Assembly (NCBI RefSeq): GCF_021869535.1 | Contig: NW_026262690.1 | Location: forward strand, 52,948,001 to 53,012,000 | Origin: Mytilus californianus | Taxonomy: Eukaryota | DNA: 64,000 nucleotides | Direction: 5' to 3' | Shown here: in pieces, positions 7,065-60,362 of the stretch | Layout: the number at the start of each line of letters is the position of its first letter | Numbering within the stretch: the first letter of the stretch is position 1 | Notes under the pieces: model-generated | Seen by the model: only the letters and a program-made list of their open reading frames with translations | Told to the model about the DNA's origin: nothing | Databases searched by the model: none | Made by a program: the position numbers and the translations under genes

Positions 7065-7294
7065 CTTATAATAGTGAGCACAATCATCAATTAATTATAG
7101 ATTTTTCATATCTGATCAAAACGGTTAAAAACAGTTGTTGGTGATAATGTTTATCCCCATTCCTTCAAATCTTATGGCGACAAGATGATCTAAGAATGTT
7201 TCCACTCCCCTAGGTTTTGCTTAGAGAAACTGTCTTTCGCATTAACTTCGAAATTACTTTTTTCACAAGTGTTGTGATGTTTGTAGTTTCTCAA

Positions 7295-9127: not shown

Positions 9128-9316
9128 GTTTGACATCCATTGACACGAATGTGGAACATGGAGCACCATAACTGTTTGACATCCATTGACACGAATGTGG
9201 AACATGGAGCACCATAACTGTTTGACATCCATTGACACGAATGTGGAACATGGAGCACCATAACTGTTTGACATCCATTGACACGAATGTGGAACATGGA
9301 ACACCATAACTGTTTG
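9128..9316. repeat. 46-bp tandem repeat, 4 copies
   Basis: Unit gtttgacatccattgacacgaatgtggaacatggagcaccataact. Confidence 0.95.
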
Positions 9317-10165: not shown

Positions 10166-10240
10166 ATAGAGAAGTTAAAGAATACAGTATATAACCGGAT
10201 CGATACTGTTCTAGCAAGACTCGGAAATACAGCTAAACAG
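10166..10240 (+). other. Candidate upstream exon of calmodulin-like gene 2 (5'UTR exon or 75-nt phase-0 coding exon)
   Basis: Good donor CAG|gtatgt at 10240/10241. Preceded by an acceptor-like tttcgttgtag|10166, but also contains TATATAA at 10188-10194. Confidence 0.45.
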
Positions 10241-10966
10241 GTATGTGATAATAGAAGTGTTGCATGTATTTCAATTAATTAAGGGAGGTCGGTAGGGGCG
10301 GGATGATTCAAGAATGATAAAAAGAGGAACTCATAATTTTTGTTTATATTTGAAAGTCTTTTAAAAAACAATTTTAAAACATTTTTATGTACACTCAGAA
10401 GGTGTCCCCCACCCCTCATAGGAAAACAAACTCAAGTGAATGAAACTTTAAGAGTAACTCCGCTTGCGTAGAACCCACTGTTCAAGAGAGAGCGAACGAA
10501 TCCAAATTATAAAATAAGGGTTTTGTAATCGAGTGTCTAGCATGTCTCATGAAACTAGAGAAGGATGCGTTATTAGCATGATGATTCTATCAACCCAGCC
10601 TTTTTGTAGATATCGTAATTGGTCACTTGAAAATCAGCCACATCAATTGGGCATTGTTAACAAATGTCTTAATTTGTGCCAATCTTACAATATATCTAAA
10701 CACTTGGTAGTTTTGGAAATAGTTTAGATTAACAAACATCAAACCACTAATGAATTAAGAAATTATTGTAAATTCGGTTATTGTAATGTTTGACTCGAAT
10801 CTTTATGTCAGTGCAGGAAGACAAAAACAAATAAATAAATATATGTATAAGCATTTTACCTGATTTTGATGTCCAATCAACTAAATGATTGAGACATATT
10901 ATCATCGGATAAATAGGATGTCACTAGTCGAGCAGGGTTTAATAACCCTTCTAAATTTGAATGCAG

Positions 10967-11280
10967 AACAGAAAGTCAACAGGACAAAAAGTCACAAACA
11001 AAAAAGTCACGGACAAAAAGTTACGGACAAAAAGTCAAGGGACAAAAAGTCACAATTCAGTGTGAGATTATTTTTCTTTGAATAAAAAAATTTTATTTAA
11101 AAAAAAAAACATTTTTGGAATTTTCTTGAACTATTATATATAAAACAACTTTGTAGACAAAATGTATTCTAAATAAAATCAATAATGATCAAACTAATAA
11201 ACGAATTATTTGTGAGTTTTTTGTCCAATTAATTTTTGACTTTCGGTGCTGTGACTTTTTGTCCTGTGACTTTCTGTCCG
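10967..11280. mobile_element. MITE-like element with tandem GGACAAAAAGTCAC subrepeats in inverted orientation
   Basis: Left arm has repeated ggacaaaaagtcac; right arm has repeated gtgactttttgtcc. Confidence 0.6.
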
Positions 11281-13516
11281 CTTACCCCGAAATTTCATTC
11301 TTGTTTTTGGCGGGGTTTCTAATCGTTTATGTAGTGTTTCGTAGACTGTTGTTTGTTTGTTTGTCTGTTGGTTCTGGCATTGTCGATATTCCCTCTTGGT
11401 ATTATGATTTTTCATATAGCGATTTGGGAGCATCAGTAGAACATATGTTACCTCATACTTTCACATTTGTGTGTGAATCATGGTTACAATTGCTTGATTG
11501 TTGTTGTTTACTTATCGTTCAGTGGCAAATATTTCATGCATATTCAGGACGAGAACATATTAACAATAACTTCAATAGTTTGATTTTGCATAATGGGTCG
11601 ACCGGGATTAATGACAGGAATTTCGAGTGCCAATGGAAAATGAGGGTTCCTTGGATACAAACAGAAATTTTGCCTTGCAGCATGCCTCTTATAGACCCCT
11701 CAAAGAGTTGTTACAAGGGTTCTAAAATTGGCATGCAGACATTGTAATATTATATACACGAGGCATCGAATTTAACACCATAATTCAGACAAGACGTGGC
11801 TGCATATTTATTCATCCCCCAGTCAAACGGATATCCCACATTAACAGCCATGGGTTTACGATCGGATTTTGGTAGTCCAGTCATGGCCATATTTGTATAC
11901 CCCAATCAACAATTGTGGCTCCAACGCTAAAAAATTTCAATGGATTGAAAACAAAAATAAGAGTGGCGTTTATAGTGGCATTTGCTACATTTGTAATTCA
12001 TATAGACGATGACTGACAAACGTATTTAAAATTGTACACATATATTAGTGAGGCGCCGTCCCTGTATCGTGTTAAAAAGATAACTACAGGACTTAGAAAC
12101 GGAGAGCTACTAAGGGGTAATCAAAATCTTAGGCGAAAAACCATAGGCGAAGATACAAAGACAACACAATGGTCAAAATAAAAGTGAAGAACAGACAACC
12201 AATAGTCCACTAAACATCACACAGAAAACTAAAGACTGAGCATCACGCGAACCCCACACAAACCGGGAGGTGTCAGGGGCTCCAAGTGTTAATATGGTGT
12301 TATGAAGCAAGATATGCTTAATTGGGTAGCGTTGAACGCTGGTGAAATTCAGAAAAAGGTCGGTGAAGAATGAGTAAGAAATAGTATATAACAACACCAG
12401 TTTTTATAAGTAAATGTATAATGATACCGTATTATCATATGGGCCCATTTAAAAAAAAAGTTCGCTTAAGTATTATAAAGTCGACAATTATATATTACAC
12501 GAATATTTGTAGATTTAAAAAACACAAATATTGTCACAAGTAGAAAGAAAGAAGTATTATGATAAATAGCAACAGTTGTTAAGATGATTGTTAGAATATT
12601 CAAATTCTTTTTTTAATTATAATTTTAAATGGTAAACTACAGAAAGTTTTGACATGAACTTATACTTAAGTGATTAAAGTTTATCAATCGATGACACGGG
12701 TATCATAATATAAGGTAGGATTTATAACATTAAAGAATTATTTTTCTTGGAATAAATATATAATTCGATCCAATAATAATTACAATGATGCTTTGTTAAA
12801 ACCATTACATATTGTATTTTACAGACTGAGAGCATAATTTGGGACGCTTAAACTGCAAACACAATTAACGAAAATGGTAAGTTCTGTTTTTAGATTGTAT
12901 TGAACTTGTATGCGACTTGTTAATATTGAGTGAGATAAATTTTGAAATTGTATTAAGCTTGAAATTTGAATAACCCATAGCCATTACGACAACTTTGATA
13001 CATATTTCATAAATGACTTTGCAGTGTATCTGGTTTTTTGTTTTATTTTTTTTTTTGGTTTTGTATATACCTGTTGGCATATTCCATTGCACAGTCCGAC
13101 TAGATATATATGTCCAAATGATCCAAATTTAATATATTTTGGCACAAGCAATTTATTACTTTTTGTGTGAATTAAAGACATATTAACGCTGAATGTAAAT
13201 TGTGTATACAATGAACACGTAAATTTTAGTTATATACAAGCTTATATGTAAACGGCTAGCAAGTTCAGCTACATTGAGTTAATTCGTTAAGTTGATTTTT
13301 TGTAGACCTCTTAAATTCTTGACAATTTGTCAAAACTCAATCGATTTGAAGCTGGCATATGATAGAAGCACTTGACTGTCACTGAAGGCCACAAAATGTC
13401 TTTTAGATGTTCATATTATTGTTTTATATTTTTTTTTTATGTCATTGACGTTTATCCAATGTTAACCAGTATATTCATTGTATAATTTAAATCAACTTTC
13501 ATCTGGATTTTAGGCA

Positions 13517-16500
13517 ATGACAGAAGATCAGCTAAAGGGTAAGATACGTTTATTAGATCTAGACTGAAAGATATTATTAGTGAAAAAAGCGACTGAGATA
13601 AATGTACTACAGTTGCGAATATGAATATTTGTTGACCTTTTATGATATAAAAATAGCCTACTTATCCCTTAAGTTAACACAGTAATGTAAGTACAAATAT
13701 TTCTCTTTCAGATAAGCGAGTTTAAATATTAATTTCTTTTATATTTTACTATTCAAAATTCATGGAGGCTAGTTTGACTTTCGACATCACTAAGCCGTAG
13801 CAAACTTATTTTATTTTTAAGTTCTATTGATTGTTAAAAGAATGTAATAAGAAAGATAATTTAGTCACAGAACCTCGTTAGACGAGATATTATATGCATA
13901 CTGTTTTCCCTATTTCCACTATCATCGTTTGTGACATTTACGGGTGCCACATGTGGAGCAGGATCTGCTTACCCTGAGATCACCCCCGGTTTTAGGTGGG
14001 GTTCGTGTTCCTCAATCTTTAGTTTTCTATGTTATGTTTTGTGTACTATTCTTTGTCTGTTTGTCTTTTTCTGTTTTAGCCATAGCGTTGTCAGTTTATT
14101 TTCGACTTATGTGTTTGAATGCCCCTTTGGTATCTTTCGCCTCTCTTTACATATGGTTATGATCTCATTTCCAAACGTTATTACTTTCCATAACAAAATT
14201 TTGAGTTCATTTGCCATAATATTCTGCCAAAAGGAGGGAGTAAACATCACATTTTTTCTAAATAAATCCTTTCCTCTGATCCTTTACAAGAATATAAAAA
14301 CAATATGCGCTTTCTCTTATTTTCCGGCTTAATTGCATCGTATTGTCTGTATTTATATTCGTGGGTATATCAGGATTTACATATATAAGGTATAGATAAG
14401 ACCATACGAACTGAAGGCAAAGATAAGAGCCAACAGAATATACATATAAAGATCATTATATTGATAAGAACCCACTCTATTTAATCCTATGTAATGTTGA
14501 GAAAGACAATTATTGCACCACTTTCTCGAAATAAAAAGATCTGAAAAAAGTAAATAAATGTACGTTAGAAGCATAGCCGACTTAGTAAGAACAATGATAT
14601 ATTTTGTGTCTCTTTCAGTTGTAATAAATTGTTGAACAATTAAAACTTTGTACACAAGTCGTCTAACCATTGACTATGATAAATGAATACAACAAATAAA
14701 TAGCGAATACTGCTCCTATTTCATTAATTCAACATGCATATATACATGCAAGTGTGATTCAGGAATTACCAATGTGAGATACATTGTAACTTGCGATGTT
14801 TAACCCAAATCCCAAAATCTTTTTTGCATGGATTCCAGTGAAATGAATTTAACAGATAGAAGAAAACTATTTAACTTTCCCGTGAAAGTATTAAATAAGA
14901 GAGAAGACACAAAGGGGACAATCAAAAACCTTAAGTCTAACAAAAAAAATAGCAAATGAAGAAGATAGAAATACGAAAGGACACACAACAGAAGTACGAG
15001 TTAGAAAAATGTGTTGTATACCTTTAGAAACAGATGAATTATGGAAACATTTATGGTTCTAAATCTTTATGGTAATATTTATCTTGAAACAGAATTAGAA
15101 GATACATTCTTACTTTTTGACAAAACTGGTGACCAGGAACTCGATATTGAAGAAGCAGGAAAAATGTGGAGATCAACAGGATTAAATCCGACCAAATCAG
15201 AAATACAAGAGATGTTCAACGAAATTGACCAAGATGGTAAGTTCAAAATTACAAAAAAATAAATAAATTATTGTGTCCTTTGCATTTTAGACAAATACAT
15301 TTTTTGTAGATGCACATGTTTTTGTTCTGGTAATGAATAACAAACAAAAATAGTGTTAGCCTAATATCGTGCATAGTTAAGACCATATGCCGTATAGCTA
15401 TGTACTCTTTAACAAATCTAGAGGTCACCACATATACAACTGTTTCCATAAAAAGACAAAATAATAATTGAGGTATAACTTCATGTATTTTTTCCATGAA
15501 AAAATATATATTCTTGAAACAAATTAAAATGACAGCTGGAGCGGTATAATGTAAAATCTTATATTGTTGACCTGTCAAGCTCACATGGAGTTACTGACCA
15601 ATAGGCGGGCATAGTTAAAAAAAATCTGATTGACAGAAATATGACAGACCAAGATGTTCCGTGAACTATTGCTCACAAGTGATACCTCCGCTATAAGTAT
15701 TCGGTAAACAAGCAATTGCAACAGGCAGTACTAACATTGCCTTTATGTGTAAGAATATATAAAAATGTAAACAGGAAATTGATGACCGATGGATGTAAAG
15801 GCATCAGGCGGTAAAGCATACGCAAAGAAAAATTGATATCAAATTTCAGAAATCTCTGATTTGTCCTTTCTTGGAAAAATGCGACAAAAACAATTCATGC
15901 GGAGAACTTATTGATTGACCGACAGAGGTATAGCTGTATACCACCCTCCGTCGATGTTGGGTTATAACAACAATATGAATTGCATGAATTCAAATCTGAA
16001 TGAGAATATGAAAACCACCAGTGTAAGCATTTTCTGTGCAAGCATCACCTGATATAACATTTTAAAGTTTTATCCGATAGTAAGGTTCACAGGAATTATA
16101 AAAATATAAGACAGTTACAACCCAACAACCACTTACAACCGACTAGCTTCACCGAGGAAATTAATATACAATATGAAAATAAGGAGCTGTGGTATGATTG
16201 CCCCCAAGACAACTTTCACCAGACACCAAAGAGCGAGGATCTTAGCAACTAAATGTCTCCATACGACCTTCCAAAACGACCAAATCCCATACCATATAGT
16301 AAGCTATAAAAAGCCCCGGCATATACAGATTTGGAACAATTCAAACTGGAAAGCCAACGGTCTGATTTATTCTAAAACAATAATCGAAAAAACAAAAAAA
16401 GACAAACAGCAACCAACAACAACCACTCTGAATTACGGACTCCTGCCTAGAGACACACATCAAGAATGTTTCGGGGTTTAATACGCTCAACCCTCTCCTT

Positions 16501-18775
16501 ACCTGGTTTAGTGGTATAACATGGTTGTGTATTACATGTAGTTGAAAAGGTCAGTACTCATAGATCGGTAGTTTACGTCTATTGTCTATTCCCCAATTAT
16601 TGTCACGTTATCCAATTATGTCCTTTTGGGTTGCTCACAAAATTTTGTCAAAATAACGGAACTTTAAACAACTGTCATACATGTTGAAGGTCTAGCTAGC
16701 TATACAACCAGGTTTAACCCACCATTTTCTTCAGAAAATGCCTGTACCAAGTACTGTATGGAAAATGAGTTGTTTTCCATTCGTTCCGTTGGTTTTTATA
16801 GTGGAGCGTTTATATTAAGCGCATCTATTTCATCGAAATAGAAATGCATGATACTAATACCACAGACACAGTAGTCTGCTTCATATCTTGACTTTCACAT
16901 AAAAATTGACAATGGGGATCGGTCAAAAGCTAAACTTTACGGCAAGAGAATTATTTCAGCTTTCCGATTGTGAATTTCCATGCATATGTAGAGTGCCTGG
17001 ATGTGGAGTTGATTACTCAAAGTTGATACACTATTCCAGAGCTAACATTTACTTTCCTATCATGATTTTTTGACAACGGATTGCTGTTTATAATTAACGA
17101 AGTTATTGAACCAAGGGTTCAGACTGGTAAAGAAGTTGAATTTCATCCATTCTAAAGGTTTATCGACGCTATTATAATTTGATTGACCATTATGGAATAT
17201 CTGTGTCACAGATGACCACAGATATTTTCTAATTGTCGATGCCATAATCCCGTCCTCTTTATCTCAAATATGACATCATTGAATGCAACTTATCAATGAA
17301 TTTTACTTGCCATGAACAGCACGACGGTTGCCACTAGTGGAGCAGGATTTGCTTACCCTTCTGGTGTTCACCCCGATTTTTTGTGGGTTTCGTGTAGCTC
17401 AGTCCTAAGTGTTCTGTGATGTGTTTTGTAGACTGTTGTTTGTCCTTTTGTCGTTTTTCTTTTTATCATGGTATAATTGTCTGTTTTTCTTCCAACTTAT
17501 GACATTTGGTATATTCTGTGATGGTAGCATCTATAGGTCATTGTCTGTTATGTCTTCTATCAAAGTTTCAATGATATCATATTTATACATATAGGTCGTG
17601 GAACGATCGACTGCAAAGAATTTATATCATGGATGTCAACAAATGGAAACAAGAATTTTGTTGATAACTTGGAGGAAGAAATGAGAGAAGCATTCAAAGT
17701 ATTTGATAGAAATGGTGACGGTTTCATAGATAGAAAAGAATTCAAACGTATCATGACTGAACTTGGAGACGAACCCTTGACCTCTGAAGAATTAGAAAAG
17801 CTGATGGGAAAATACGACGAAGATGGAGACGACAAAATAAGCTATGAAGGTAAACGATATAAATAATGTTACATGTGTTATATTAAAATTTTCATGTAAC
17901 AGGGGCAAAACTGTACAGATATCATATATAGACTCTTTGTAATAAGAAGTTATGTATAACACCTATTTAAACATCAGTGTGGTTATTTAGTTAGACAGTG
18001 CTTTTGTTTAAAACTTACTTATACACATATTATGCATTTTTATACCATATCGAAGCCATGAGCTTTCCTGAAAATATTCAAAACCTTATTTTGATAATGA
18101 TAAGTTATTATGAAGGAGTTTATTTATGTGTTAATTCGGCCGACTCACTAAGGCACAAACTGAATCAAGTCCTAATTAATGATAATTTTGTGCGTGAAAG
18201 GCAAAATTAAAAGATAAATTAACTACGTAAAATAACATTGTTACTTATTTATTCCAATGAAAGGTAATACCACTTATATCCAAATAGAAAATATACCAAT
18301 TACACTTACAGAAATATTTCGCCCGTGTAGGAATTCATACTCGTGACGCCAGTGGTTGCCGTGGCACTATTTAAGTTTATAAATGAAAAATACATGTGTA
18401 TCAACAATAACTATATGTATCATACAACAGTGGATCACTGGAATGTGATAAAAGCTTTTCTTTAATGCAGGAAGTTCTTTTAAAATAAGCACAAATATAT
18501 TAAAGAGGACTGACTTTTGTTAAAGGCCAAACGTGTTTGTAATATTGACCATCGTGCACTTATATTATAAGTGCAACTTATTCTATATCTATTCAAAACC
18601 GATTTTGTTGAAGAGTTATTTATACTTTCACAAATAAATAAAATTTCAGGTTCTATATTTATTACCTCCTCTTTTTGCAGAATTCATACCAGGTTTTGTT
18701 GAAATGGCGCGAATCAGAGATGCATTTGAAGTAAAAGAAGATGACGAACAAACAAACAATGAAAATGAATACTAA
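13517..18775 (+). CDS. Calmodulin-like EF-hand gene 2 with acidic C-terminal extension (171 aa from ATG 13517); exons 13514/13517-13538, 15093-15236, 17595-17849, 18681-18775
   Basis: Splice sites tttag|gcaATG...AAGG|gtaag, acag|15093...15236|gtaag, atag|17595...17849|gtaaac, ttgcag|18681...TAA join in frame. Product: [171 protein letters not shown]. Confidence 0.9.
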
Positions 18776-19221
18776 ACATCATAATTCATAATAGACTGAA
18801 ATGTTAAACATTTGTATTTGTTTTAGTTATTAGTGCAATATATTCTCATCAAGCTTCATTATTATCAATTTACACAGTTTTAGTTTGCTCTTGTCTTGCT
18901 TTTTTGGCATATACGCTGTTGTTAGCACTCAGTTTTTGTGGTCGTCCCGATAGGCAGCAACAGCGATGTTTTCACTTCAAAAAACAAAGATTATAAAAGT
19001 AAGCTTGTCAGAAATATTCGAAAGGTATACCGCAACTTCTCTGCGGAACATATTATTCTGCTGCGGATTGCCTACTTAACTTAATAAATATTCACTCGTT
19101 AGACTCAATCGCAAATACATCTGAATTATATCTATGCACATTATAGATTTAAAACAATATGTTAAAATATAAACAAAACCCATTAAATCGATGACAGTTG
19201 AATATGTAAACAGTAACTGTC

Positions 19222-47441: not shown

Positions 47442-49724
47442 TATCGTGTGCACAACTGACTGTCGACAACAAAAACTTCACGCAATTACAGTATGTCAGG
47501 GGCCTCTCAATGGGGATATAAAAGTTTTTGCATGAAAGTTTATAGGAATTCGTTTTGAATATATTTATATACTCAAAAAAAAAAGTTTCTTTGGACAGAA
47601 TGAATATATTCAGAGGTGATATCACCAATCACCAAGTAATCGAGAAAAAAAACGTTATGTTTTTTTCTTGCACAAACGTTCTGTGGCTCCTTAAAAATAT
47701 AAGAAAACATTTATATCGAACGAGTTGATATAGAGTAACCTATGATCAGATTTCATACAAAGATTATTTTTGTTGGTAATACGAACCCCGGACCTTCATA
47801 AAAAATCAGTTTAGTCCTCTGGGCTGCATAATGTTTTGCACGGAACAAATTTGAATTCCCATCGAAGACTCCAACGATCAGATTTTCGTGAACATTTAAA
47901 TATCATTCTAACAAAAAATAACTCGTGAAAATATCAAGAAGCATATGAATCCGGTCTTATGTGCAAAATTTACGTTGATTGGAGTCAGAGTAGCTTTTGT
48001 GGAAACATTGATATTTATTTTAGATTTTTTTTTATACCTGAACACGTAAAAAAAAAATTACGGGATCTATATTCTTTTGCTTCAAATTAAGCAGGTAATT
48101 TCAATGAATTTGATCATTACGTAATGTTAAAATCATATAAAGAATAGGCAAATCATCATTACAAAATAACAAAACCACATCATGTAATGAAACAACTACA
48201 TAACGTTAAGTCACATTCACATCAAGAATTGTTAAACCACATTGATTAAAGACACAACCACATTAAATAGTGGTGAAACCACATCGAGTAATGACAAAAC
48301 CATATTGAGTAATGACAAAACTATATCAAGTCAATACGAAACCATATCGTGTAATATCGAAATATCATTAAGTAATGACTATTCCATATTGAGTTATATC
48401 AAAACATCATTACGTAATGTCAAAACCATATTAAGTAAAGACAAAATATCATCAAGTAATAATAAAACAACATAAAGTAATATCAGTTTTCCACATAAGA
48501 CAGCTGTGGCGTTCCATACATGCATTGTGCGTGTTGAGTTATTTAAAGGAAAAGAATGTCAACATTGAAAGTGAAACAAAGGTAAATCATTTGATTAAAA
48601 TTGAGAATGGAAATGGGGAATGTGTCAAAGAGACAACAACCCGACCACAGAACAGACAACAGCAGAAGGCCACCAACAGGTCTTCAATGCAGCGAGAAAT
48701 TCCCGCACCCGGAGGCGTCCTTCAGCTGGCCCCTAAACAAATATATATACTAGTTCAGTGATAATGAACGCCATACTAAACTTAATTGACTGATTCGATT
48801 CACAAAATATCATTCTTATACAGGTAAAAACGATGATTAACATATATATTTTTAATCTATAATATGAAATTAAACAGACCTAGAAAAATCCAAATGCACG
48901 AGTTCGTTTCTATTTATATCTATATTTATGTTTATATTGCTTTTATGGCCATCGGAGGTCAACTCGATAGTTAATTAGATAGCGTCTAGACTAAAATACA
49001 CACGAAACAAAGTTACATATTCTCGAGCCCATGCCCTGTAAATTGTTTGTTTTAGACTTTTCATAATGTGGATAAATGTTTTACATTGTTATAAATGAAA
49101 TATGAGAATTTTAGTCAAATCGGTGAACATGAATTTGACAGCTAGTGCCCCTTTAATCAGGAATGGTCGCTCCCTTACAATTTGAAATTGTACTCACTTC
49201 TTTTTCGGTTTCTGTGTTTCAATATATATCCATGAATTTAATGATATGTTCACAATACATCTGTTTTTGAATAATAAATCATGTGCAGTGTAATAATAAC
49301 CTTTAAACTGGGTGAACTCGTTTAATTATTCTAGAATAAAAGGTATTGTAAACATATTTAATTCATGGATAAATACTGAAACACAAATTAAAAAAAGTTA
49401 AGTACAGTTCTAAATTAAATCGCTGTGATCCGTCCATTCGTTTTTCAAATCAACAGAACAGCTGCATTCAACAGGTAGGACACATTTCCTTATACGGATT
49501 ACTTGGTGATATCACCTATGCATATACTCATTCTTTCAAAAGAAACTTTTTGCTGTGAGTATACATATATTAAAAAGAAATTCCTATAAACTTTCATGCA
49601 AAAAAAATAATTCTATGAAAGGACATGTGTAAAATAGTAATAATGTATATCCCCATTGAGAGGCCCCTGACATACTGCAATTGCGTGAAGTCTTTGTTGT
49701 CGACGGCCAGTGACCGACACGATA
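47442..49724. mobile_element. Degenerate ~2.3-kb DNA transposon with ~200-bp imperfect TIRs
   Basis: 47442-47640 is the reverse complement of ~49495-49724 (e.g. gtatgtcaggggcctctcaatggggatata). No clear TSD; no transposase seen. Confidence 0.65.
48240..48480. repeat. Degenerate ~21-bp tandem repeat
   Basis: Recurrent aaaaccatattgagtaatgac-like units. Confidence 0.6.
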
Positions 49725-49730
49725 TTATAT

Positions 49731-49870
49731 AAATAACACATAGCTGAGAGGGTGATAGAGCAGATTGTTACCCCGAAAAAACATTGTCAACTGAGGCGAA
49801 GCCAAGTTTGACAATGTCTTTTCGAGGGGTAACAATCTGCTCTATCACCCTCTCAGATATGTGTTATTTA
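49731..49870. mobile_element. 140-bp palindromic element, followed by a 73-bp tandem duplication (49966-50105)
   Basis: Arms aaataacacat.gctgagagggtgatagagcagattgttacccc / reverse complement; centre GGCGAAGCC. Confidence 0.75.
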
Positions 49871-50545
49871 ATTTATTATACTGAATGTTCTGTTATAACT
49901 GTCGATTAAATTTCAAATTCAAAGTAATAAACTATGACGTCTTGTACATAACAACCATCCGTATGTAATAAAGCGCACACTTGATCAAGCGTCTCCGTGA
50001 AGGGTAATAGAGTATTTGCCATAGGATAGAGTCGGATTTAATAAAGCGCACACTTGATCAAGCGTCTCCGTGAAGGGTAATAGAGTATTTACCATAGAAT
50101 AGAGTAAATTGTCTCACTCGTATTAACCAATTAAAATCTGGAATTTTGACATGAAGTATAAATACATTTAAATATCAGGTGTCCATGTCCACACTGTTAT
50201 ATTCTATATGGTGCAGCTTATTCTGGGAAAAAACGGTGGTGAGCACAGATGTCGGAATCATACCAATCTAATTAAATTAAATCTCCGCACTTGCTCCTCG
50301 TTGTTTATATGTCGCGCGTGGGAGATCTAACTACAGCCGCTTGAGGGTCATGTCTAGGGTCAAATTTGCAGTAGCCAATCAGCGAAGGTGCTACAAACTG
50401 TTAGGGTATTGGACTGGCATAGGAGTCTTAGTAGCGTCTAGAGGTCTTCCGAATGTATATAAACAAAAATGGCAGCCCCATGCGAAAAAAGTTTCGTAAC
50501 ATACAACTGTAATAATAGTTTGTATTATTGCCTTCCGAGGTTAAA

Positions 50546-51179
50546 ATGGCATCAAGTGAAGTATGCACCCAAAGGAAAATATCAGGAAGAACAAACATTT
50601 GTGTTTTATGCGGTTTTTCTTTCATCCAGATAGAAATCTCAACGGGAGAACGTGTTGAAAAAAAAACTGTTCAAACTGAAACTTCAGCAGAACTCAGAGA
50701 ATCGCAATAATTTCTAGTGTTGTTACTGGTTTTGAAGTAAACGCCGAAGTAGACAAGGACAATGGCGTCTGTATTAAATGTTTTAGAAAAGTCCAACAGT
50801 CAATCAAATTAAAAAAAGATGCATTAAAAATGCAAGAAGAACTAAGTGACTAACTTCGGGTGTCTTACCACCTGACCAATCAGAAAGATTAATTGTTAAT
50901 AGATTTGTAAATCTGCAAGGTGGAACAAACAATAATATAAGCTTAGATGAATACTTAGAGATGTTGAACAAGGATACAAAAGTAACATGTTCAGGACATC
51001 AGACAAAGGAAAGTATCCTTCAACACTCTAAAGAGTATCCTCACCTAGTTAATTTTGCAAGCCATTTTGATAACATTACCAATTTAACAGGAAAGAAGGG
51101 GTTCCCCCATATACCGTCATACCAAGCTGATGTTCAGAAAATTGCAAAAGACCTACTACACTACAAGAACATGTACTAA
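50546..51179 (+). pseudogene. Academ-type transposase remnant: N-terminal C2-C2 zinc-finger piece next to the C-terminal segment, catalytic core apparently deleted
   Basis: ATG 50546 MASSEVC...NICVLCGFSF..., then after frameshifts ...GVCIKCFRKV...; next 50850-51179 reads GVLPPDQSERLIVNRFVNLQGGTNNNISLDEYLEMLNKDTKVTCSGHQTKES.... This resembles the NRFVN-x2-G-x4-NI-x-D-x3-E-x2-N-x3-K motif I recognise from Academ/DUF6589-type transposases. Confidence 0.7.
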
Positions 51180-51935
51180 CATATAAAACTTCAAGAATAA
51201 TTAAGTGCAAGGAGCTAAAAAAAGACAAAAACCCATTTGACAGTGCATTTATAGGACTTCGTACATTGATTCATTGACATCAACCAACAGTCCCCTTCCA
51301 TCACCTTCGAAACCCACGTATTTGAAAAATATTGCTTGGAAATAAATTATTGTGAATAAAGTGTGCAGGTTTAATTTTCTCTTAAGTCATAACCTTAATT
51401 AGCTGGTACTTTTTTTAGTAGTTTGTTGCTGATATTAAAAAAAATGTGTGTCATAAGTCAATGAGACATCAACCCAACAACAAAGTAATGAAATACTTTC
51501 AGTTTAGTGGCAGAATATCATGGTCATTTTGATTAGGCAGCATAACTACCTACAAAAACATGTTTATAAAAATGTGGCATGATTTCTAACGAGACAACTA
51601 TTCAAAAGGGACCAACCTATTTTTCTGTTCACAGTTCCACCTCTGACTTTGAGTAAAACCTATAGCAAGCTATAAAAAGGCCGGAAATAACTTTATGAAA
51701 ACATCAAGCATGTTTGTACAAAACAACAATGAGATAAAAACCAAACTTTTACAGATTTGTTCACAAGGCGACCAGCATGCGGATATTTACCCTATATGTA
51801 CATGTAAAGAGCTGTTGATAAAACTTATACAAGGTGGTGTTGGTTAAATGTGCTTTCCTGACTGATGGAGTTATTAGTGCACATTATTTGGTTCAATTTC
51901 TATCTAAGTCAAATTAAACACAGTAACTTAATATA

Positions 51936-52912
51936 ATAAAATGCTCCGCTGGGCGCAGCTTGATACGACCGCAGAGGTCGAACCCTGAACAGTTGGGGCA
52001 AGTATGGACACAACATTCAAGCTTGATACAGCACTGAATTTGGATTGTGATTAAATATTTGACACTGCATAGGTTTCTGACACAGAATGAATGTGGTCTA
52101 AGAACTTATAAATTTTAAATTTACCTATTCAAACCATATCATTATTATTTGGTTTTATATATAAATCAGAAATAACAAATTTAAAATGGAAAATTTTAAA
52201 GAAAAAAAGGGAAAAAAAATCCCTCCCACCCAAATTTTGAACCCCCTTATGATTCATCACCCCCAAACTCAATCCCAGCCTTCCCTTTGTGGTATGGTAC
52301 CTTGCTGTACAAATTCTGAGAGATCCATACACTTGAACACAAGTTATTGACTGGAAACTAGAAAAATGCTTGTTTTTTGGCCCCTTTTTGGTTTAAAATT
52401 TCTAAACATTTAGGGAAATTACCCCCAAACTCAAACCCAGCTTTCCCTTTGTGATATGGAACCTTGTAGTACAATTTCAGAAAGATCCATACACTTACAC
52501 ACAAGTTATTGCCATGAAACTGAGAAATGCTTGTTTTTTGCCCCTTTTTTTACCCCTAATTACTAAAATTTTGAGGCAATTACCCCCAAAATCAATCCCA
52601 GCCTTCCCTTTGTGATATGGAACCTTGTGGTACAATGTCAGAGAGATCCATACACTTACACACAAGTAATGTCTGGAAGTTACAAAAATGCTTATTTTTG
52701 GCCCCTAATTCCTGAACTGTTGGTACCATAACCCCCAAAATCAATCCCCACCTGCCTTTTGTGGTATTGAACCTTATGGTAAAATTTCATGGAGATCCAT
52801 TCACTCAAACTAAAGTTAGAGTGCGAAAACCAATGTGTCTTCGGAGGACGACGACAACGCCAACGTCATACCAATATACGACCGCAAATTTTTTTTGTGG
52901 TCGTATAAAAAA
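51936..52912 (+). mobile_element. HINE-like element with ~160-bp internal tandem repeats, nested in the Academ element
   Basis: About 4 tandem units (ccccaaa.tcaatcccagccttccctttgtg...), a GAC microsatellite, a 3' palindrome tatacgaccgc...gtggtcgtata and an A-run end. Confidence 0.6.
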
Positions 52913-53344
52913 GAAGATGTGGTATTAAGTCTATATTTGACGGTTTTCTTGATGAACACATTGGTCTTGAACAAAGTTGTAAGTAAGATATAGTCCCACT
53001 GCTTGTTATTGTCTTGAATATGCATGAAATATTTGCCACTGAAACCCAAGTGAAGAAATCAATAATCAATCAACCTGTCAATGTTTATTTTGAGCAAAAT
53101 AATCATCCTCTGTATACTGTTGGCTACACCAAGTTAAATACAATGAGTTTGCTATATAGAACAAATATAACATCAAGAACAATGAACAAAAAGGTCAAAG
53201 TCATACATGTCATATGAACCATGCCAAAATTTAGCACAAAAGGACATACATCAATAGCAATAATTCTGTACAGTAATACACCAAAGATAGTTGACTTGTT
53301 GATCAATAAACCATGAAAAGTCAAGGTCAGAAACCAACCAGACT

Positions 53345-53740
53345 GATTTTTATAGTTCGTTCCTGTGTTGTACTGTTACACCACTGTCCCAGGTAAGGAT
53401 CCTGCTAACATGTTAAACCCCGCCACATTCTGTATGTATGTGCACGTGCCTGTCCTAAGTCAGGAGCCTGTAATTCAGTGGTTGTCGTTTGTTTATGTGT
53501 TACATATTTGTTTTTCGTTCATTTTTTGTACATAAATTAGGCCGTTAGTTTTCTTGCTTGAATTGTTTTACAATTGTCATTTCAGGGCCTTTTAGAGCCG
53601 ACTATGCGGTATCGGCTTTGCTCATTGTTGAAGGCCGTACAGTGACCTATAGTTGTTAATTTCTGTTTCATTTGGTCTCTTGTGGAGAGTTGTCTCATCA
53701 TGCTCATTGGCTATCATACCACATCTTCTTTTTTATATAG
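53345..53740 (+). repeat. Dispersed repeat family B copy; others at ~5270-5560, 16170-16490 (reverse), 21890-22110, 28440-28710, 45370-45540 (reverse), 55720-56075, 56680-56840
   Basis: Shared core gaaggccgtacggtgacctatagttgttaatttctgtgtcatttggtctcttgtggagagttgtctcattggcaatcatacc. Confidence 0.8.
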
Positions 53741-54297
53741 CATGTACATCTTACAATAATTCCACTCCAAATATATTTTTCTGTTTGTTTATCATGTTTA
53801 TAGTAATCGAGATGCAGACTTGACCCCGAATATATGCTTGTTTCATGAAATGAGGTCAAAATTAGGCGAATCTGCAACCATATCTGACAGACATGGTTTT
53901 CTCTTTTGAATTTTTTTCATATTTTTCTGGTCGGGGCCTTTTGTAGCCGACTAAAGGCATGGGTTTTTCTCGTTGTACTACAATTGCTTATATCAAGTTA
54001 TTGAAAAGTCTGGAGGGTAGTTGTCTGATTGGCAATCATACCGCATCTCTTTATTTTTAAGATGAAAAATAGTAAATATCTTATGATGTGTGTCATTCAG
54101 TTACTGTCTCATTTGTTTTCATACGCTACATCTCTTTTTAGTCACATTGACAGCTGCAGGCATGACATGACCCAGATCTAGAGTGGCAATACAGCAATTG
54201 TAAGGGGGTTAAAAGTCAAAAAAATTTGAAGAGTCTTAAGTTGAATAAGTTACAGCAACCAGATACTGAAAAATTAAATAAATAAATATCAACTGTT

Positions 54298-57200
54298 TTA
54301 ATCATCTTGTACTTCTAATAAAGCCATATCAAGATCTTCGAAGTATTCATAGGCAGACAAATTGTAGTCTTCAGTATTTCTATCTGATACAGCAGAATCT
54401 TCTTGCTCCTCAACAACTTGTTCTGACAGAAATAACTTCTCAAGAGGTAACATATCACAGGATTCACAATTACAAGACTTAGCACACAAGTCACAGCATG
54501 AATGTTTCCTGCTTTCTTTCTTCATCAAATCATCCAAGTCTGAATTTCTGAGGAAATTACACATCAGATCCTTTCTCCTACAATCTTTAGCTTTAAGAAT
54601 TGCCTTAACTTCCGGTTTCAACTTCTGCAAGTGGTATCCATTGTATAGGATAATGGCAACTGATGGATTTCCATCACTCCCCACTCGCCCTATTTCTTGC
54701 AGCAAATCTACCAGATTATTTTGAGGTCCAAATAATACCACTCCACTACACAAACCCATTCCCAGGGCACTGGTTGACAAAATAAGTCTCAAAACACTAC
54801 TTTCCTCCTTCAATGCATTAATTATAATGTTTTTGTTAACATCTGGAGTTTCAGAATGGAACATCTCAATATACTTGGCACAATGTGGCAAATCTGTTAC
54901 AATGTATTTATAAGGTTTGGAAGTGTCATTTATCGATGAATAATACAAAAGTGTACGTGGGAAGTCCTGTCTTTTTTCCTCTTATGCATCTACTGACCAT
55001 GTCATTCCCATTTCAATTTCATTTTTAATTTTGGAAGATACTAGTTTAATATTAGACTTGTTTGGTGATAAATTAATTTCTGTTGTGTCCTCCCCTAGCT
55101 GTAATATTTTCATGAGTTTTTTCCTAAAGCTTACATTGCAAGTTGCACTTAAAGCCAATACTGTAGCATCGGGAAAGAGGGATCTTAGTTCACCTACATT
55201 TGAAAACCATTTTCGGAAAGCCTCTTTTCTGTCTCCTTCATCTTGGCCCCTGAAAGAAAAATAGAAATAAGTACATCTATAAAAACTTTTATAAAAGGTA
55301 AATATCAGCACCTCTTGCCTAGTTTGTTAATTCTTATGGCAAAACAAAAATAAATACATGTATGTGCATGTCCATATTGTTATGTAACAGCCTATCATTC
55401 AGTGGTTGTTGTTGGTTGCTGTCTAGCACATTTGTTTATGGTGTTATTTTTCATACATTCTTATAATTACATTGTAATGGTTCAACATTTTGCAAGTAGT
55501 GGTCTTAAAAGAGCTTACTTTTTAGTATTAGGTTATCTCGTTCTTGAAAGCTGTACAGTTCTGTACCAGTGGTCTTAATTTTTTACTTCTATATTTTTGA
55601 AAATCTAAAATTCATAAAAATGGGAAGGGAGTACACATCAATATATAGAAACAATTCATCAAAGTTTCATGCAAATTCGTTGAATAGTTTTTGAGTTACT
55701 GTCTGACATGTTGACGATTGACAGACAGTCACAGGTTAGGGGAGGGTTGGGATCCCGCTAACATGTTTAACCCTGCCACATTCTGTATAGTGCCTGTCCC
55801 AAGTCAGGAGCCTGTAATTCAGTAGTTGTCATTTGTTTATGTGTTACATATTTGTTTTTCATTCATTTTTTGTGCATAAATAAGGCCGTTTGTTTTCTCG
55901 TTTGAATTGTTTTACATTGTCATTTTGGGGCCTTTGATAGCTGACTGTGCGGTATGGGCTTTGCTCATTGTTGAAGGCCGTACGGTGACCTATTATAGTT
56001 ATTTATTTCTGTGTCATTTGGTCTCTTGTGGAGAGTTGTCTCATTGGCAATCCTACCACTATTCTTTTTTATATAGACAACGGTATACCATAATACGTCC
56101 TGTAGATGTGCGAATAGAAATGAACATGGGGAATAAACATTGTATCCACTTACCAAATTGCTATTGTGTGAAACTCATCAATTACAATCAACTTAATGTT
56201 CAACTTCTTTAAACAAGTTCTCCAATAGGGATCACCAACCAATGTTTCTGGAGATGCAAAAATGACATCTATCAACCCCTCTTTGATTCGATCGTCACTC
56301 TGGGGGGGATGATCCTAAAATGCAAAAAAAAATGTAGGTGGGCAGTCTCCAAAAAGACATATTTCTATGATAACTTCTATAATTTAAATGTACACAAAAA
56401 TGTACACTGTACAAATACCCTTTATCCATTTCACTGCGTTTGATTCAAGATTGAAATCCAATGAAATAATTCTTATTGTTGTAAAGTCCAATACAGAAAT
56501 GAATCTAGCTGAGATTTCAATGAATGCATGGCATATTTTCTCGATTTTGAGATGTTTCTGCCAATTTACCTGTTTGGCCATCCAACAAGGTCATTTAGAC
56601 TGCACTTTTTCATATTTTTCTTTTATTTTTTCATTGTTTAACACAGATAACAATCTAATTTAAAAATTAAGTTTCCCGCACGTTTCTGGGCCATGTAAAG
56701 CTGACTATGCTGTATGATTTTGCTCATTGTTGAAGGTCAGATGGTGACCTATCGTTGTAAACTTTGTCATTTGTTGTCTGGTGGAGAGTCGAGTTGGCAA
56801 TTATAGTCTTGTACATGTACGACATCTTCTTATTTTTATATGCATGTATATTTGTTTTGAGATAGATTATTAGTACATGTAATTAACAACATTTCCCTTG
56901 GACTCTGGTGCTTCATTAATACAACATGTAGTATATATCTTTATACAAAGTATGAAGAACTAGCATTATGGCCAAAACGACTGTAAAATACTGGCAATAT
57001 GACCGATACAATCTGTTCTCGGTGAAATGAGACAAATTTATGTGCTACCATGGCTACGATCTACTGCTTCTGCAGTTTTTTTTAACTTTGCTCATGTATA
57101 TCTAAGTTTCATATTACTGCTTTGTTACTGTTAGTCATGTGTATGTGTTGATATACTGAAGTTTAAATGTATGTTCCTGCAAATAAATTTTATTTTATTT

Positions 57201-58450
57201 GATAAGGCATACATGTACATCTTTGCCTGGTCAGATGCGGATCCAGGGCTATGGAAAAGGGGGCCCTGTGTGGGAATAACGTCTTAAGATAGAGTCATTG
57301 CATTAATTATATAAGTAGCTCAAACAGCATAGGTGGATCCAGGGGGGCCTGTGCCCCCCTTTTGTGGGAAAAATTTAGTTGATTATATAGGGAATCACTG
57401 AAGCATGACTGGAGCGGGCCCCCTCTTAGGTCAGTCAGTGGGCCCCCCTTACAAAAAGTTCTGGATCCTCCACTGTACAGGGGGATAACATGTCACCCCC
57501 TAAATGATTTCTCAGGTGTTATAAACATCTTTATTATACAACACTGCCAACATAATAATTATAATATAAATTAGGTGTTTAATGGCATTAAATACTATAC
57601 ATGTAGTATAGACTATTCCATTTATTGAAGCCTTACTACCACTGCATGCTTAAAGTTATACTAACCTTTGTATGTAGCAGTACTATTTCCAATGTGCGAG
57701 AGTTTTTCCACCTGGTCCTGCATCAGAGCTACTAAGGAACAACAGACTAAAACTTTCCAGTCAGAACTGTTTTCAATAACCTCCCGGACAACTGGAAGGT
57801 ACAGTTGAAACGGCAGTGACTTGCCAAAACCAGTCGGGAGTACAGCCACGCAGTTCTTCTTGTTAACAAAACACTCTAAAATTTCCTTTTGCTCCTTCTT
57901 TATATCATTTATAAGGGGACGAAGTCCCCTATTACAGTAGAAAAATCAATAAAAAAAAAAAAAAAAAAAAATCGGGAAAATTTCCCGAAATTTTCATTGT
58001 ACTAATGAACTCAAAATCGTTAACTTTTTTTTTGTAACTTTTTTAAATTCCCGCATTTGCGCAGAAATCTACTTCCTTTTTCCGGTCTCGTTTGTCATGA
58101 GACTTTGAGTGAAATATATATTTATCAGTCCAGTACATTATAGGAAGGAACACAATAACAATTTCATTTCTAATTATTCTTTGATATGAAAAAACGTTAC
58201 CTGATGATAGCGTCTTTGTTTACATTGAATATGACGTCATAATTAAAATAACGTCACAACTAAAATCCCTAACAACAGAACCAAAATCGGAAACGTTACG
58301 GTATTTCCGTTTCTTTTTTAACAGATTTAGAACTTTTAAAAAATATGTTTGAATTAAAAAAAAATAATTGATATAGACTTCGTCCCCTTTCACAGGTAAT
58401 GCCTGCCTCATATTAAGGGGACGAAGTCCCCTATTACGGTAGAAAAATCA

Positions 58451-58483
<33 letters not shown>

Positions 58484-58983
58484 GGGAAAATTTCCCGAAA
58501 TTTTCATTCTACTAATGAACTCAAAATCGTTAACTTTTTTATTTTCAGACTTTTTTATTTTCCCGCATTTGCGCAGAAATCTACTTCCTTTTTCCGGTCT
58601 CGTTTGCATGAGTCTTTGAGTAAAATATATATTTATCAGTCTAGTAAAATATAGGAAGGAACGCAATACCAATTCCATTTTTAATAATTTCTTGAATGGC
58701 TTGATATGAAAAAAACGTTACCTGATAGCGTTTCTTTGTTTACATTGAATATGACGTCATAACATAAATAACGTCACAACTAAAATTCCGAACAACAGAA
58801 CCGAAATCGGAAACGTAAGGGTATTTCCGTTTCTTTTTGAACAGATTTTGAAGTTAAAATATGTTTGAATTAAAAAAAATAATTCATACAGACTTCGTCC
58901 CCTTTCACAGGTAACGCCTGCCTCATATTACCAAATTTTGGCAAAACTTTTGTCAAAACGTTGTCCAAACTGGGCGCATCCAT
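54298..58983 (-). pseudogene. RecQ-like SF2 helicase pseudogene of the transposon; exons 58983-58930 + 57912-57666 (split by an insertion), 56314-56154, 55249-54298
   Basis: Motif I LPTGFGKS; DEFH box (LIVIDEFHTIAIW|GQD); motif III ALSAT; STSALGMG; motif VI QEIGRVG; zinc module CRR...HSCCDLC. GT-AG introns. Lesions: +1 C in a C-run near 56302-56308, in-frame TAA at 54984-54982, 1-kb insertion in exon 1. Confidence 0.88.
57913..58929 (+). mobile_element. Head-to-tail dimer of a ~500-bp HINE/DINE-1-like non-autonomous Helentron (copies 57913-58414 and 58415-58929)
   Basis: Each copy starts with hairpin AGGGGAC-GAA-GTCCCCT, carries the subterminal inverted repeat GACTTCGTCCCCTT near its 3' end, then a small hairpin (CAGG-taayg-CCTG). 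Removing 57913-58929 restores the helicase frame (KFG|INDIKKEQ). Confidence 0.7.
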
Positions 58984-60362
58984 ATTTTTTAACGATTCGA
59001 TAATGATATACAAGCCCGTCGCTGATTGGTTAATCGAAATTGATTTTCTGCACGCTGATTGGTCGGTCAAAGTTCACCAAATTTGACCCTAGTCATGACC
59101 CTCAAGCGGCTGTTGTTAGATCTCTCACGCGCGACATATAAACAACGAGGAGCAAGTGCGGAGATTTAATTTTAATTAGATTGGTATCATACGTTTTTAA
59201 TACTGCTATTGTGTTATTATATACATATTACATCGGCATTTTTAGCGATACACGTTACAGAGTTATTTACTATTGAACCATAAAATTTGGAGACTCTTCA
59301 TAATTATTTCCTGCTCTCGTTGGACTTTTTAAAAAAAGGTTTGTTAGTCACTCTTTATATTCACTTCAAAATATATATAAAGTAAACAAAATGATGACGT
59401 ATTTAAACTACAAATGCAGCAACTATGACTAGTTTGTCATAGTTCGTTTGCATTTAATTTACAATTTTAATCTGTTCACTTTAAATGTTTTTAAAGGCAA
59501 ACTGATTATAATTTATTGCATTTACATTTTTATAAAACAAACAACCTACTTAGTGAAACAGATGAGTGTTGAGATTTAAGATCTCCAGCGCTTGACTTTA
59601 AACCAACAGGGCACCGTAGTATTGTGATCACTGTGTCTTTAGTACTAAATTGATATTTCGATAGTTTTTTTAATGAAATTGATTTTTTTACTGTGTTATA
59701 GCAAATATAGGTTGATGACTTGCTTATACCCCAACCATCCTTGATTCATATCCACAATTCTCGTTAAACCATTATTTGATGGAAATTGAATTTTAATAAA
59801 TAGATTGGTCAGTAGTCAAGAGTGCACTCTTTTTATTACATTGTGATACTCTAATTATTTTGGGGTTTACAAAGTAAAACATGGACCGTGGCATATCTAC
59901 ATGCATAAAAATGAAAGGCGCGATAGTATGAAATTGAAGATACTTCTCGAAAATTTTCTAGTTGAATAAAAAACATAGTTAGGGCACTTACTTAAACTTT
60001 CAATTATCAAATAGTACCTGAACGAGTCATAAACTCATTTTAAATATTTACAGAAACGACCCAGTTTTCACCCTCAGAGATACCATAAATTTCAATATCG
60101 GTTGATAAGACTGAATCCCAAATTACCACTTATGTACATACGATTTCGTAACTTCGTAAACAAGTTCAGTTAATAGCAACGTCCATATCAACAATGACCT
60201 ATACATGTTTAAATGCACACAAATAACTTCTTCTAAGCTAATCTGTCGATGTATATTATATTGTGTGTGTGAAATCTTACTTATTTGAGTGATAATGTTA
60301 CTGGTTCATTTTAAATACTTTACAATTGATTACTAGTATTGAAATTGATACAACTTTAAGAC

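What the first reader, a model, noticed from the sequence alone, without database searches (positions are those of the whole stretch)
50258..59189. Helicase-carrying Academ element whose target-site duplication looks 3 bp, not 9-10 bp
Seen: 108/109-bp TIRs about 96% identical, TA...TA ends, a spliced RecQ-like helicase gene (-) converging on a transposase remnant (+), and TCA directly outside both TIRs (50258-50260, 59187-59189). The flanks share no 9- or 10-bp repeat (tcggaatca vs tcatacgtt). Established: AcademH (helicase) families are described with 9-10-bp TSDs, and 3-4-bp TSDs are described for Academ families lacking the helicase. Inference: this could be a helicase-bearing lineage with the short-TSD chemistry. 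Caveats: a 3-bp match can arise by chance, and a 5-bp ATCAT reading with ACC...GGT ends is also possible.
Basis: partly seen in the sequence, partly recalled or inferred. Interest (0 to 1): 0.75.

Follow-up and report, generated by a model that had tools for sequence, protein, structure and literature searches.

The report
Defective helicase transposon with 9-bp duplication
This is an ordinary, non-autonomous copy of a helicase-carrying (AcademH-type) DNA transposon of bivalves; once its ends are placed correctly it has the expected 9-bp target-site duplication, not the unusual 3-bp one.

Summary
The inverted repeats, the spliced RecQ-like helicase gene (-) and the transposase remnant (+) are real. 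The element's ends were set 3 bp too far out.

Across about 30 other ends of the same family in this genome, conservation starts at CAATCTAATTAAA. The element therefore spans 50264-59183. Its flanks are GAATCATAC (50255-50263) and GTATCATAC (59184-59192), an 8/9 match.

Of 15 end-pairs of the family, 12 have perfect 9-bp duplications, 2 match 8/9, and 1 rearranged copy has none. Intact relatives in Pecten and Ostrea share the terminal motif CA(A/G)TCT(A/G)ATTAAAAT and also have 9-bp duplications.

These relatives encode a DUF6589 protein and a convergent RecQ-like helicase. The DUF6589 protein is predicted to have the fold of a DDE transposase with an insertion domain.

The window's family has lost the catalytic core of the transposase, and its helicase is broken, so it must be moved in trans. 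Two copies are 100% identical over 7,745 bp at different sites, so the family moved very recently.

Everything tested fits AcademH (9-10 bp duplications). I could not compare the transposase directly with curated Academ transposases. The short-duplication hypothesis is refuted. Interest is low.

The parts
50255..50263 (.). Left copy of the 9-bp target-site duplication, GAATCATAC
   Evidence: It matches the right copy at 8 of 9 positions in the register set by the family-wide terminus CAATC.
50264..50368 (+). Left terminal inverted repeat. It starts CAATCTAATTAAA and carries a 1-bp deletion (one A) relative to the family.
   Evidence: Contigs of four public runs carry the extra A at 50273. The TIR is 106 nt and perfect in copy L031.
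50375..50384 (+). CCAATCAGCG motif just inside the left TIR, pointing inward. It may be a CCAAT-box promoter element for the transposase gene (inference).
   Evidence: 3 matches in the window against 0.01 expected, all three in the sub-terminal regions of this element.
50546..50877 (+). N-terminal zinc-finger (zf-AD-like) part of the transposase gene
   Evidence: tblastn of the Mytilus coruscus protein P0072, residues 1-113. The equivalent exon of copy L031 gives a weak Pfam zf-AD hit, E 1e-4, below the curated cut-off.
50850..51322 (+). C-terminal ~155 residues of a DUF6589 transposase, with a frameshift and a stop. The ~380 residues between the zinc finger and this piece are deleted; they hold the invariant GDNWD, GGDRLTDE and EDFH motifs and a C2H2 finger.
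   Evidence: tblastn of P0024 residues 496-651 and P0069 residues 422-551. DUF6589 hits on intact relatives. Lesions.
52259..52705 (.). Internal 161-bp minisatellite. The window copy has about one unit more than the 7.7-kb copies.
54301..55284 (-). Helicase exon 3. It holds motif III (LALSAT), the Helicase_C domain, a RecQ-like CRRK..NFL motif and a CCDLC...C..C cysteine cluster. It is broken by a stop and a 4-residue deletion.
   Evidence: Sequence matches in the PDB include RecQ and WRN.
56153..56332 (-). Helicase exon 2 (IFASPETLVGD ... VIDEFHTIAIW, i.e. motif II in its DEFH form)
57664..57912 (-). Main part of helicase exon 1 (motif I LPTGFGKSLP; motif Ia LVALMQDQV)
   Evidence: tblastn with exon 1 of the Pecten helicase, E 4e-28.
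57914..58928 (.). Nested insertion of 1,015 bp, made of two tandem ~510-bp units that each contain an A-run. It splits helicase exon 1 and is absent from all other copies.
58929..58983 (-). Start of helicase exon 1, cut off from the rest by the nested insertion. The ATG lies at about 58983-58981.
   Evidence: Reading against the L033 alignment, which begins NMDAPSLDNVLTKVLPKFG.
59020..59062 (-). Two CCAATCAGCG motifs just inside the right TIR, pointing inward, about 40-80 bp upstream of the helicase ATG
59079..59183 (-). Right terminal inverted repeat, ending ...TTTAATTAGATTG
59184..59192 (.). Right copy of the 9-bp target-site duplication, GTATCATAC

Best explanation
Window 50264-59183 is an old copy (about 94% identical to its relatives) of a bivalve DNA transposon family. 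The family has 106-nt terminal inverted repeats and about 70-110 copies in this genome.

The family derives from a two-gene element of the AcademH type. In that element a DDE transposase (Pfam DUF6589) is read inward from one end, and a three-exon RecQ-like SF2 helicase is read inward from the other.

Integration makes staggered cuts 9 bp apart in the target, which produces 9-bp target-site duplications (shown here).

This family has lost the catalytic core of the transposase. Its younger subfamily carries shared stop codons in the helicase. The copies are therefore non-autonomous and must be mobilised in trans by a related autonomous element that recognises the shared ends (inferred).

The window copy has decayed further: one substitution in its duplication, a 1-bp deletion in the left TIR, a stop and a deletion in the helicase, and a nested 1-kb insertion in helicase exon 1.
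For: Ends and duplication:
- Conservation among about 30 family ends begins at CAATCTAATTAAA.
- Of 15 end-pairs, 12 are perfect 9/9, 2 are 8/9 and 1 rearranged copy has no match.

Copy number: 220 TIR candidates, 94 candidates for the transposase-remnant exon, and many helicase matches.

Coding content:
- Only the zinc-finger exon and the last ~155 residues of the transposase remain.
- The catalytic exon has only 5 matches in the genome, none in a copy of this family.
- The helicase has RecQ-type motifs in three exons.
- The younger subfamily shares stops at exon 1 position 92 and exon 3 position 91.

Recent mobility: L031 and L032 differ at 0 of 7,745 bp but have unrelated flanks and different duplications.

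Intact relatives:
- Pecten L066 is 9,882 bp with 84-nt TIRs, a perfect 9-bp duplication, a 793-aa DUF6589 gene and a convergent 473-aa DEAD+Helicase_C gene.
- Ostrea L065 has the same layout and an 8/9 duplication.
- Mytilus trossulus L059 has the same gene pair.
- The terminal motif CA(A/G)TCT(A/G)ATTAAAAT is shared.

Genome-wide association: by my own comparison of the coordinate lists, about 30 DUF6589 loci in this genome have a related helicase within about 10 kb, nearly all convergent.

Fold: the AlphaFold2 model of P0103 (pLDDT 86, pTM 0.85) has DDE transposases or recombinases as its top 21 PDB neighbours. These include P element (Z 8.0), ISCth4 (6.9), Hermes (6.6) and RAG1 (5.8).

Literature: AcademH makes 9-10-bp duplications and AcademX 3-4-bp ones (PMC10045372). 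Academ is expanded in bivalves (PMC10294476).
Against: - No curated Academ/AcademH transposase sequence (Repbase/Dfam) was available, and Kojima 2020 could not be read. The name 'Academ' for the DUF6589 transposase therefore rests on published diagnostic features, not on a phylogeny.
- A 9-bp duplication and ~100-nt TIRs are also typical of Mutator-like elements.
- The structural Z-scores (8 or lower) show the fold class, not the superfamily.
- No autonomous copy with this family's exact TIR was found in the assembly. The closest coding relative (contig C121) shares about 81-86% amino-acid identity with the window copy's remnant (about 68-86% with other copies), and its ends could not be fetched.
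Confidence: 0.85

Rival explanations
1. One reading: a helicase-bearing Academ lineage that integrates with a 3-bp stagger (duplication TCA, ends TA...TA).
For: TCA does occur at 50258-50260 and 59187-59189, and the inverted repeat appears to run on to TA...TA in this one copy.
Against: The three bases outside CAATC vary in every other copy, so they are flank. Twelve of 15 pairs have perfect 9-bp repeats in the CAATC register. A 3-bp match has a 1/64 chance. The extra TIR bases are explained by GTA/TAC complementarity within the 9-mer.
Confidence: 0.01
2. One reading: a 5-bp duplication ATCAT with ACC...GGT ends.
For: ATCAT is present on both sides of this copy.
Against: It is simply the middle of the 9-mer G(A/T)ATCATAC. 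AC/GT are not conserved at the ends of other copies. In one search no copy reaches 5/5 in the true CAATC register.
Confidence: 0.01
3. The family is a Mutator-like element (MULE), or belongs to an unnamed superfamily that happens to carry a helicase, rather than to Academ.
For: MULEs typically have 9-11-bp duplications and ~100-200-nt TIRs. The IS256-family transposase ISCth4 is the second-best structural neighbour (Z 6.9). Direct comparison with curated Academ transposases was not possible.
Against: A Pfam scan at E<=10 finds only DUF6589 and a C2H2 finger, with no MULE, Transposase_mut, hAT or P-element domain. The best structural neighbour is the P element transposase, and Hermes and RAG1 score similarly, so the fold search does not favour MULE. 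A transposase gene paired with a separate RecQ-like helicase gene and 9-10-bp duplications is the published AcademH signature. Academ is a bivalve-expanded superfamily.
Confidence: 0.08
4. The window copy, or its family, is autonomous and encodes working proteins.
For: All three helicase exons are present. Motif I is intact in the window copy. Some copies are 100% identical to each other.
Against: The transposase lacks about 380 residues that include the invariant GDNWD and GGDRLTDE motifs. The window helicase has a stop, a deletion and a 1-kb insertion in exon 1. The younger copies share two helicase stops.
Confidence: 0.02

Closest known systems
AcademH (helicase-encoding lineage of the Academ superfamily; Kojima 2020, Mob DNA 11:15, as cited in PMC10045372)
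   Same: A TIR-bounded cut-and-paste element with 9-bp target-site duplications. A transposase gene is paired with a separate SF2 (RecQ-like) helicase gene, and there is no XPG nuclease. It occurs in animals and is abundant in bivalves.
   Different: This family is an internal-deletion derivative: the transposase core is gone and the helicase is broken in the copies examined. Homology of the DUF6589 transposase to curated AcademH transposases could not be tested here.
AcademX (Academ lineage that encodes a transposase fused to an XPG nuclease)
   Same: Presumably a related transposase; same superfamily, if the assignment is right.
   Different: AcademX makes 3-4-bp duplications and carries XPG rather than a helicase. 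Here the duplication is 9 bp, a helicase is present, and the genome's only 3 XPG_I matches lie far from any DUF6589 locus.
Mutator-like elements (MULE/MuDR)
   Same: 9-11-bp duplications, TIRs of about 100 nt or more, and many non-autonomous derivatives moved in trans.
   Different: No MULE or Transposase_mut domain was found. MULEs do not characteristically carry a RecQ-like helicase gene.
KolobokH (helicase-encoding Kolobok, mentioned in PMC10799480)
   Same: A DDE TIR transposon that also carries a helicase.
   Different: Kolobok duplicates TTAA (4 bp; from my own knowledge). Here the duplications are 9 bp with no TTAA preference.

Membership tests
AcademH | Target-site duplication of 9 or 10 bp (PMC10045372, citing Kojima 2020) | tested here: met
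   Of 15 end-pairs, 12 are perfect 9 bp and 2 are 8/9, including the window copy. Pecten is 9/9 and Ostrea 8/9.
AcademH | Bounded by terminal inverted repeats | tested here: met
   The TIR is 106 nt and perfect in copy L031. The window copy matches at 101 of 105 positions.
AcademH | Encodes a helicase in addition to the transposase | tested here: met
   A three-exon RecQ-like SF2 helicase is present. It is broken in the window copy and intact (473 and 489 aa, DEAD + Helicase_C) in the Pecten and Ostrea relatives. About 30 DUF6589-helicase pairs occur in this genome.
AcademH | Transposase is a DDD/E enzyme | tested here: met
   Tested on relatives only. The AlphaFold2 model of P0103 (pLDDT 86) has P element, ISCth4, Hermes and RAG1 as best neighbours, Z 5.8-8.0. 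GDNWD, GGDRLTDE and LDEY are invariant or nearly so. The window copy keeps only the part around LDEY.
AcademH | Transposase groups with curated Academ transposases in a phylogeny | not testable with these tools
   No Repbase or Dfam Academ protein was available. Kojima 2020 and Yuan & Wessler 2011 are not held. The supplement labelled as the class II library in PMC10294476 actually holds SINEs.
AcademX | 3-4-bp target-site duplication | tested here: not met
   The duplication is 9 bp.
AcademX | XPG nuclease domain | tested here: not met
   No XPG hit on the element's ORFs. The genome's 3 XPG_I matches are not near any DUF6589 locus.
MULE (Mutator) | MULE or Transposase_mut catalytic domain | tested here: not met
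   A Pfam scan of four full-length relatives at E<=10 finds only DUF6589 and zinc fingers.
KolobokH | TTAA target-site duplication (from my own knowledge) | tested here: not met
   The 14 observed duplications are 9 bp long, varied in sequence, and none is TTAA.
hAT / P | 8-bp (hAT) or 7-8-bp (P) duplication, and family-specific Pfam domains | tested here: not met
   The duplication is 9 bp, and there is no hAT dimerisation or P-element domain. The fold is similar only at the level of the class.

The most novel reading that the evidence does not exclude
A helicase-carrying AcademH-type derivative is still jumping: two insertions differ at 0 of 7,745 bp, and a third differs at 1 of 2,598 bp. 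Yet its transposase core is deleted and its helicase carries shared stop codons. If so, these ends can be mobilised wholly in trans, the helicase is not needed in cis, and Pfam DUF6589 is the catalytic domain of this transposase lineage. The 15-nt terminal motif and the inward CCAAT boxes are conserved across three bivalve orders.
Probability: 0.55. Interest if true: 0.3.

Novelty: new member of a known kind. Interest (0 to 1): 0.15.

Why it matters
Had a helicase-bearing Academ lineage used a 3-bp duplication, it would have broken the reported link between the accessory enzyme (helicase or XPG nuclease) and the spacing of the integration cuts. It does not. This family follows the published rule, which adds independent support from Mytilus, Pecten and Ostrea elements.

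Three by-products may be useful:
- a practical signature for annotating these elements in bivalves: the ends CA(A/G)TCT(A/G)ATTAAAAT, a 9-bp duplication, and a DUF6589 gene converging on a RecQ-like helicase gene;
- a structural argument that DUF6589 is a DDE transposase;
- evidence that a doubly defective derivative moved very recently.

Tried and rejected
- Reading Kojima 2020 (by DOI and by PMC7165386) and Yuan & Wessler 2011: neither is held.
- The PMC10294476 supplement labelled as the class II library: the stored text is SINE consensus sequences.
- Profile search of the transposase alignment against PDB sequences: only zinc-finger noise.
- ESM Atlas: only molluscan DUF6589 clusters, and nothing once DUF6589 was skipped.
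- XPG_I co-location test as a link to AcademX: 3 host-like hits, uninformative.
- TIR search in the Mytilus trossulus locus L059: none found.
- Public runs for an empty allele: all runs are kept as contigs, the left flank is itself high-copy repeat, and no contig bridges position 50263/50264. All three duplication readings predict the same empty site in any case.
- The large representative-protein search was not run. Its best 150 hits would be unnamed molluscan paralogues and could not settle the superfamily name.
- Exons were searched one at a time by reference.
Full report
**Observation**

The region holds a long inverted repeat (arms 50274-50368 and 59078-59172, 95 nt, 97% complementary). 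The terminal ~10 nt are offset by a 1-bp indel.

**True ends**

A search of the window's own genome (1.65 Gb, 175 contigs) with the left arm gave 220 candidates; 40 were scored, at 97-100% identity. I lined up 30 of these ends. Every copy is identical from CAATCTAATTAAA inward, and the bases just outside differ from copy to copy. The element therefore starts at 50264 and ends at 59183, a length of 8,920 bp.

**Target-site duplication**

I measured from the conserved terminus in 11 complete copies. Nine have a perfect 9-bp direct repeat, and no other length from 3 to 12 bp gives a full match. Two, including the window copy, match 8/9. Four more end-pairs gave three perfect 9-mers and one mismatch, the mismatch in a visibly rearranged copy. 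The tally is 12 perfect, 2 at 8/9 and 1 with no match, out of 15.

The window's 9-mers are GAATCATAC (50255-50263) and GTATCATAC (59184-59192). An 8/9 match in a fixed register has a chance of about 1e-4. The TIR looked 3 bp longer because GTA and TAC are reverse complements.

**Coding content**

Pfam finds Helicase_C on the minus-strand ORFs. I compared the element, exon by exon, with an intact Pecten helicase gene. This shows three exons:
- exon 1, with motif I (LPTGFGKSLP) and motif Ia (LVALMQDQV);
- exon 2, with motif II (VIDEFHTIAIW);
- exon 3, with LALSAT, the Helicase_C domain, CRRK..NFL and a CCDLC..C..C cysteine cluster.

This is the RecQ motif arrangement. RecQ and WRN are among the best PDB sequence matches, alongside DEAD-box proteins.

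On the plus strand only two pieces of the transposase remain: an N-terminal zinc-finger exon and the last ~155 residues. Intact relatives are 750-800-aa molluscan proteins whose only Pfam domain is DUF6589. The missing ~380 residues hold the invariant GDNWD, GGDRLTDE and EDFH motifs and a C2H2 finger.

**Is DUF6589 a transposase?**

An AlphaFold2 model of the Mytilus trossulus protein P0103 was built from 29 aligned relatives (pLDDT 86, pTM 0.85). Its top 21 PDB neighbours by VIA-align are all DDE transposases or recombinases. The best are those whose RNase H-like core is interrupted by a helical insertion domain:
- P element, Z 8.0 with 370 residues aligned;
- ISCth4, Z 6.9;
- Hermes, Z 6.6;
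- RAG1, Z 5.8.

Foldseek also ranks Hermes at the top, with probability up to 0.97. These scores establish the fold class, not the superfamily.

**Intact relatives and the module**

In Pecten maximus (L066), Ostrea edulis (L065) and Mytilus trossulus (L059), the DUF6589 gene is followed by a convergent helicase gene. The Pecten and Ostrea helicases are 473 and 489 aa with DEAD + Helicase_C.

The Pecten element is 9,882 bp with 84-nt TIRs and a perfect 9-bp duplication, ACATTATTG. The Ostrea element is 12,678 bp with an 8/9 duplication. All three genera share the terminal motif CA(A/G)TCT(A/G)ATTAAAAT.

In the window's genome I compared the coordinate lists by eye. About 30 DUF6589 loci have a related helicase within about 10 kb, nearly all convergent, and this includes lineages whose helicase is only ~30% identical to the query.

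**Family history**

The canonical copy is about 7.7 kb. The catalytic exon has only 5 matches in the genome, none inside a copy of this family, so the family is non-autonomous.

A younger subfamily is 96-100% identical among its members and shares two helicase stop codons. Two of its copies, 190 kb apart, differ at 0 of 7,745 bp yet have unrelated flanks and different duplications. A third copy differs at 1 of 2,598 bp. That indicates very recent mobilisation in trans.

The window copy belongs to an older layer, about 94% identical to all others. It has private lesions: a helicase stop, a 4-residue deletion, and a 1,015-bp nested insertion that splits helicase exon 1.

Contigs from public runs labelled as three different organisms carry the element's sequence nearly unchanged.

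**Comparison with known families**

PMC10045372, citing Kojima 2020, states that AcademH makes 9-10-bp duplications and AcademX 3-4-bp ones, and links the difference to the helicase or the nuclease. PMC10294476 reports Academ as a bivalve-expanded superfamily.

Every diagnostic feature I could test fits AcademH: TIRs, a 9-bp duplication, a transposase plus a separate helicase, and no XPG. MULE, hAT, P and Kolobok each fail on Pfam domains or on duplication length. The one feature I could not test is phylogenetic grouping with curated Academ transposases.

**Limits**

- Exons were searched singly by reference.

**Verdict**

The sequence features are real. The unusual inference is not: this is an ordinary non-autonomous AcademH-type element with the expected 9-bp duplication.

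Noticed in passing
window 57914-58928: A nested 1,015-bp insertion made of two tandem ~510-bp units. Each unit starts AGGGGACGAAGTCCCC and contains a 20-30-nt A-run. It sits between ...TTTATA and CCAAAT..., and the uninterrupted site is visible in copy L033 at 7826/7827. The element type was not identified.
   Followed up: partly
window 50375-50384, 59020-59029, 59053-59062; also L066 and L065 about 92-118 nt from each end: CCAATCAGCG occurs 3 times in the window against 0.01 expected, all just inside the TIRs and pointing inward, upstream of the two genes' start codons. A CCAAT lies at a similar distance from both ends of the Pecten and Ostrea elements. These may be promoter CCAAT boxes.
   Followed up: partly
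G000:C1:45108687-45116432 (L031) and G000:C1:45298366-45306113 (L032): Two copies of the family with 0 differences over 7,745 bp, unrelated flanks and different 9-bp duplications (GACATACAT and ATGAATTAT), 190 kb apart. This is evidence of very recent, possibly local, transposition of a doubly defective element.
   Followed up: yes
G000:C121:20435567-20458863 (L055, L060, L061): The closest coding relative has open transposase exons and an open 334-aa helicase exon. It lies in an inverted duplication that is 99.94% identical over at least 3.4 kb, with a second helicase copy 14.5 kb away. This could be a real palindrome or an assembly artefact. Its ends were not found.
   Followed up: partly
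G000:C165:31550688-31551728 and G000:C143:72016368-72017321: DUF6589 matches that lie inside very long open frames (1,372 and 2,172 aa). They may be fusion or domesticated proteins. Not examined.
   Followed up: no
window 48764-49183 and 49688-50191: The left flank of the element is itself high-copy repeat. It includes a 52-nt hairpin-like inverted repeat at 49730-49870 and a 73-bp tandem duplication at 49960-50105. Word depths in public contigs are hundreds of times higher than in neighbouring stretches.
   Followed up: no
window 53434-53700, 55358-55451, 55778-56044, 56719-56789: Several copies of a ~270-bp interspersed repeat sit in the helicase introns and the spacer. Related sequence occurs in the introns of other DUF6589/helicase loci (L055-L057), so it is probably a separate SINE- or MITE-like family.
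   Followed up: no
L065 (Ostrea edulis) 6474-19151: The intact Ostrea element lies inside the span of a host short-chain dehydrogenase gene model (2914 to beyond 24941), presumably in an intron.
   Followed up: no
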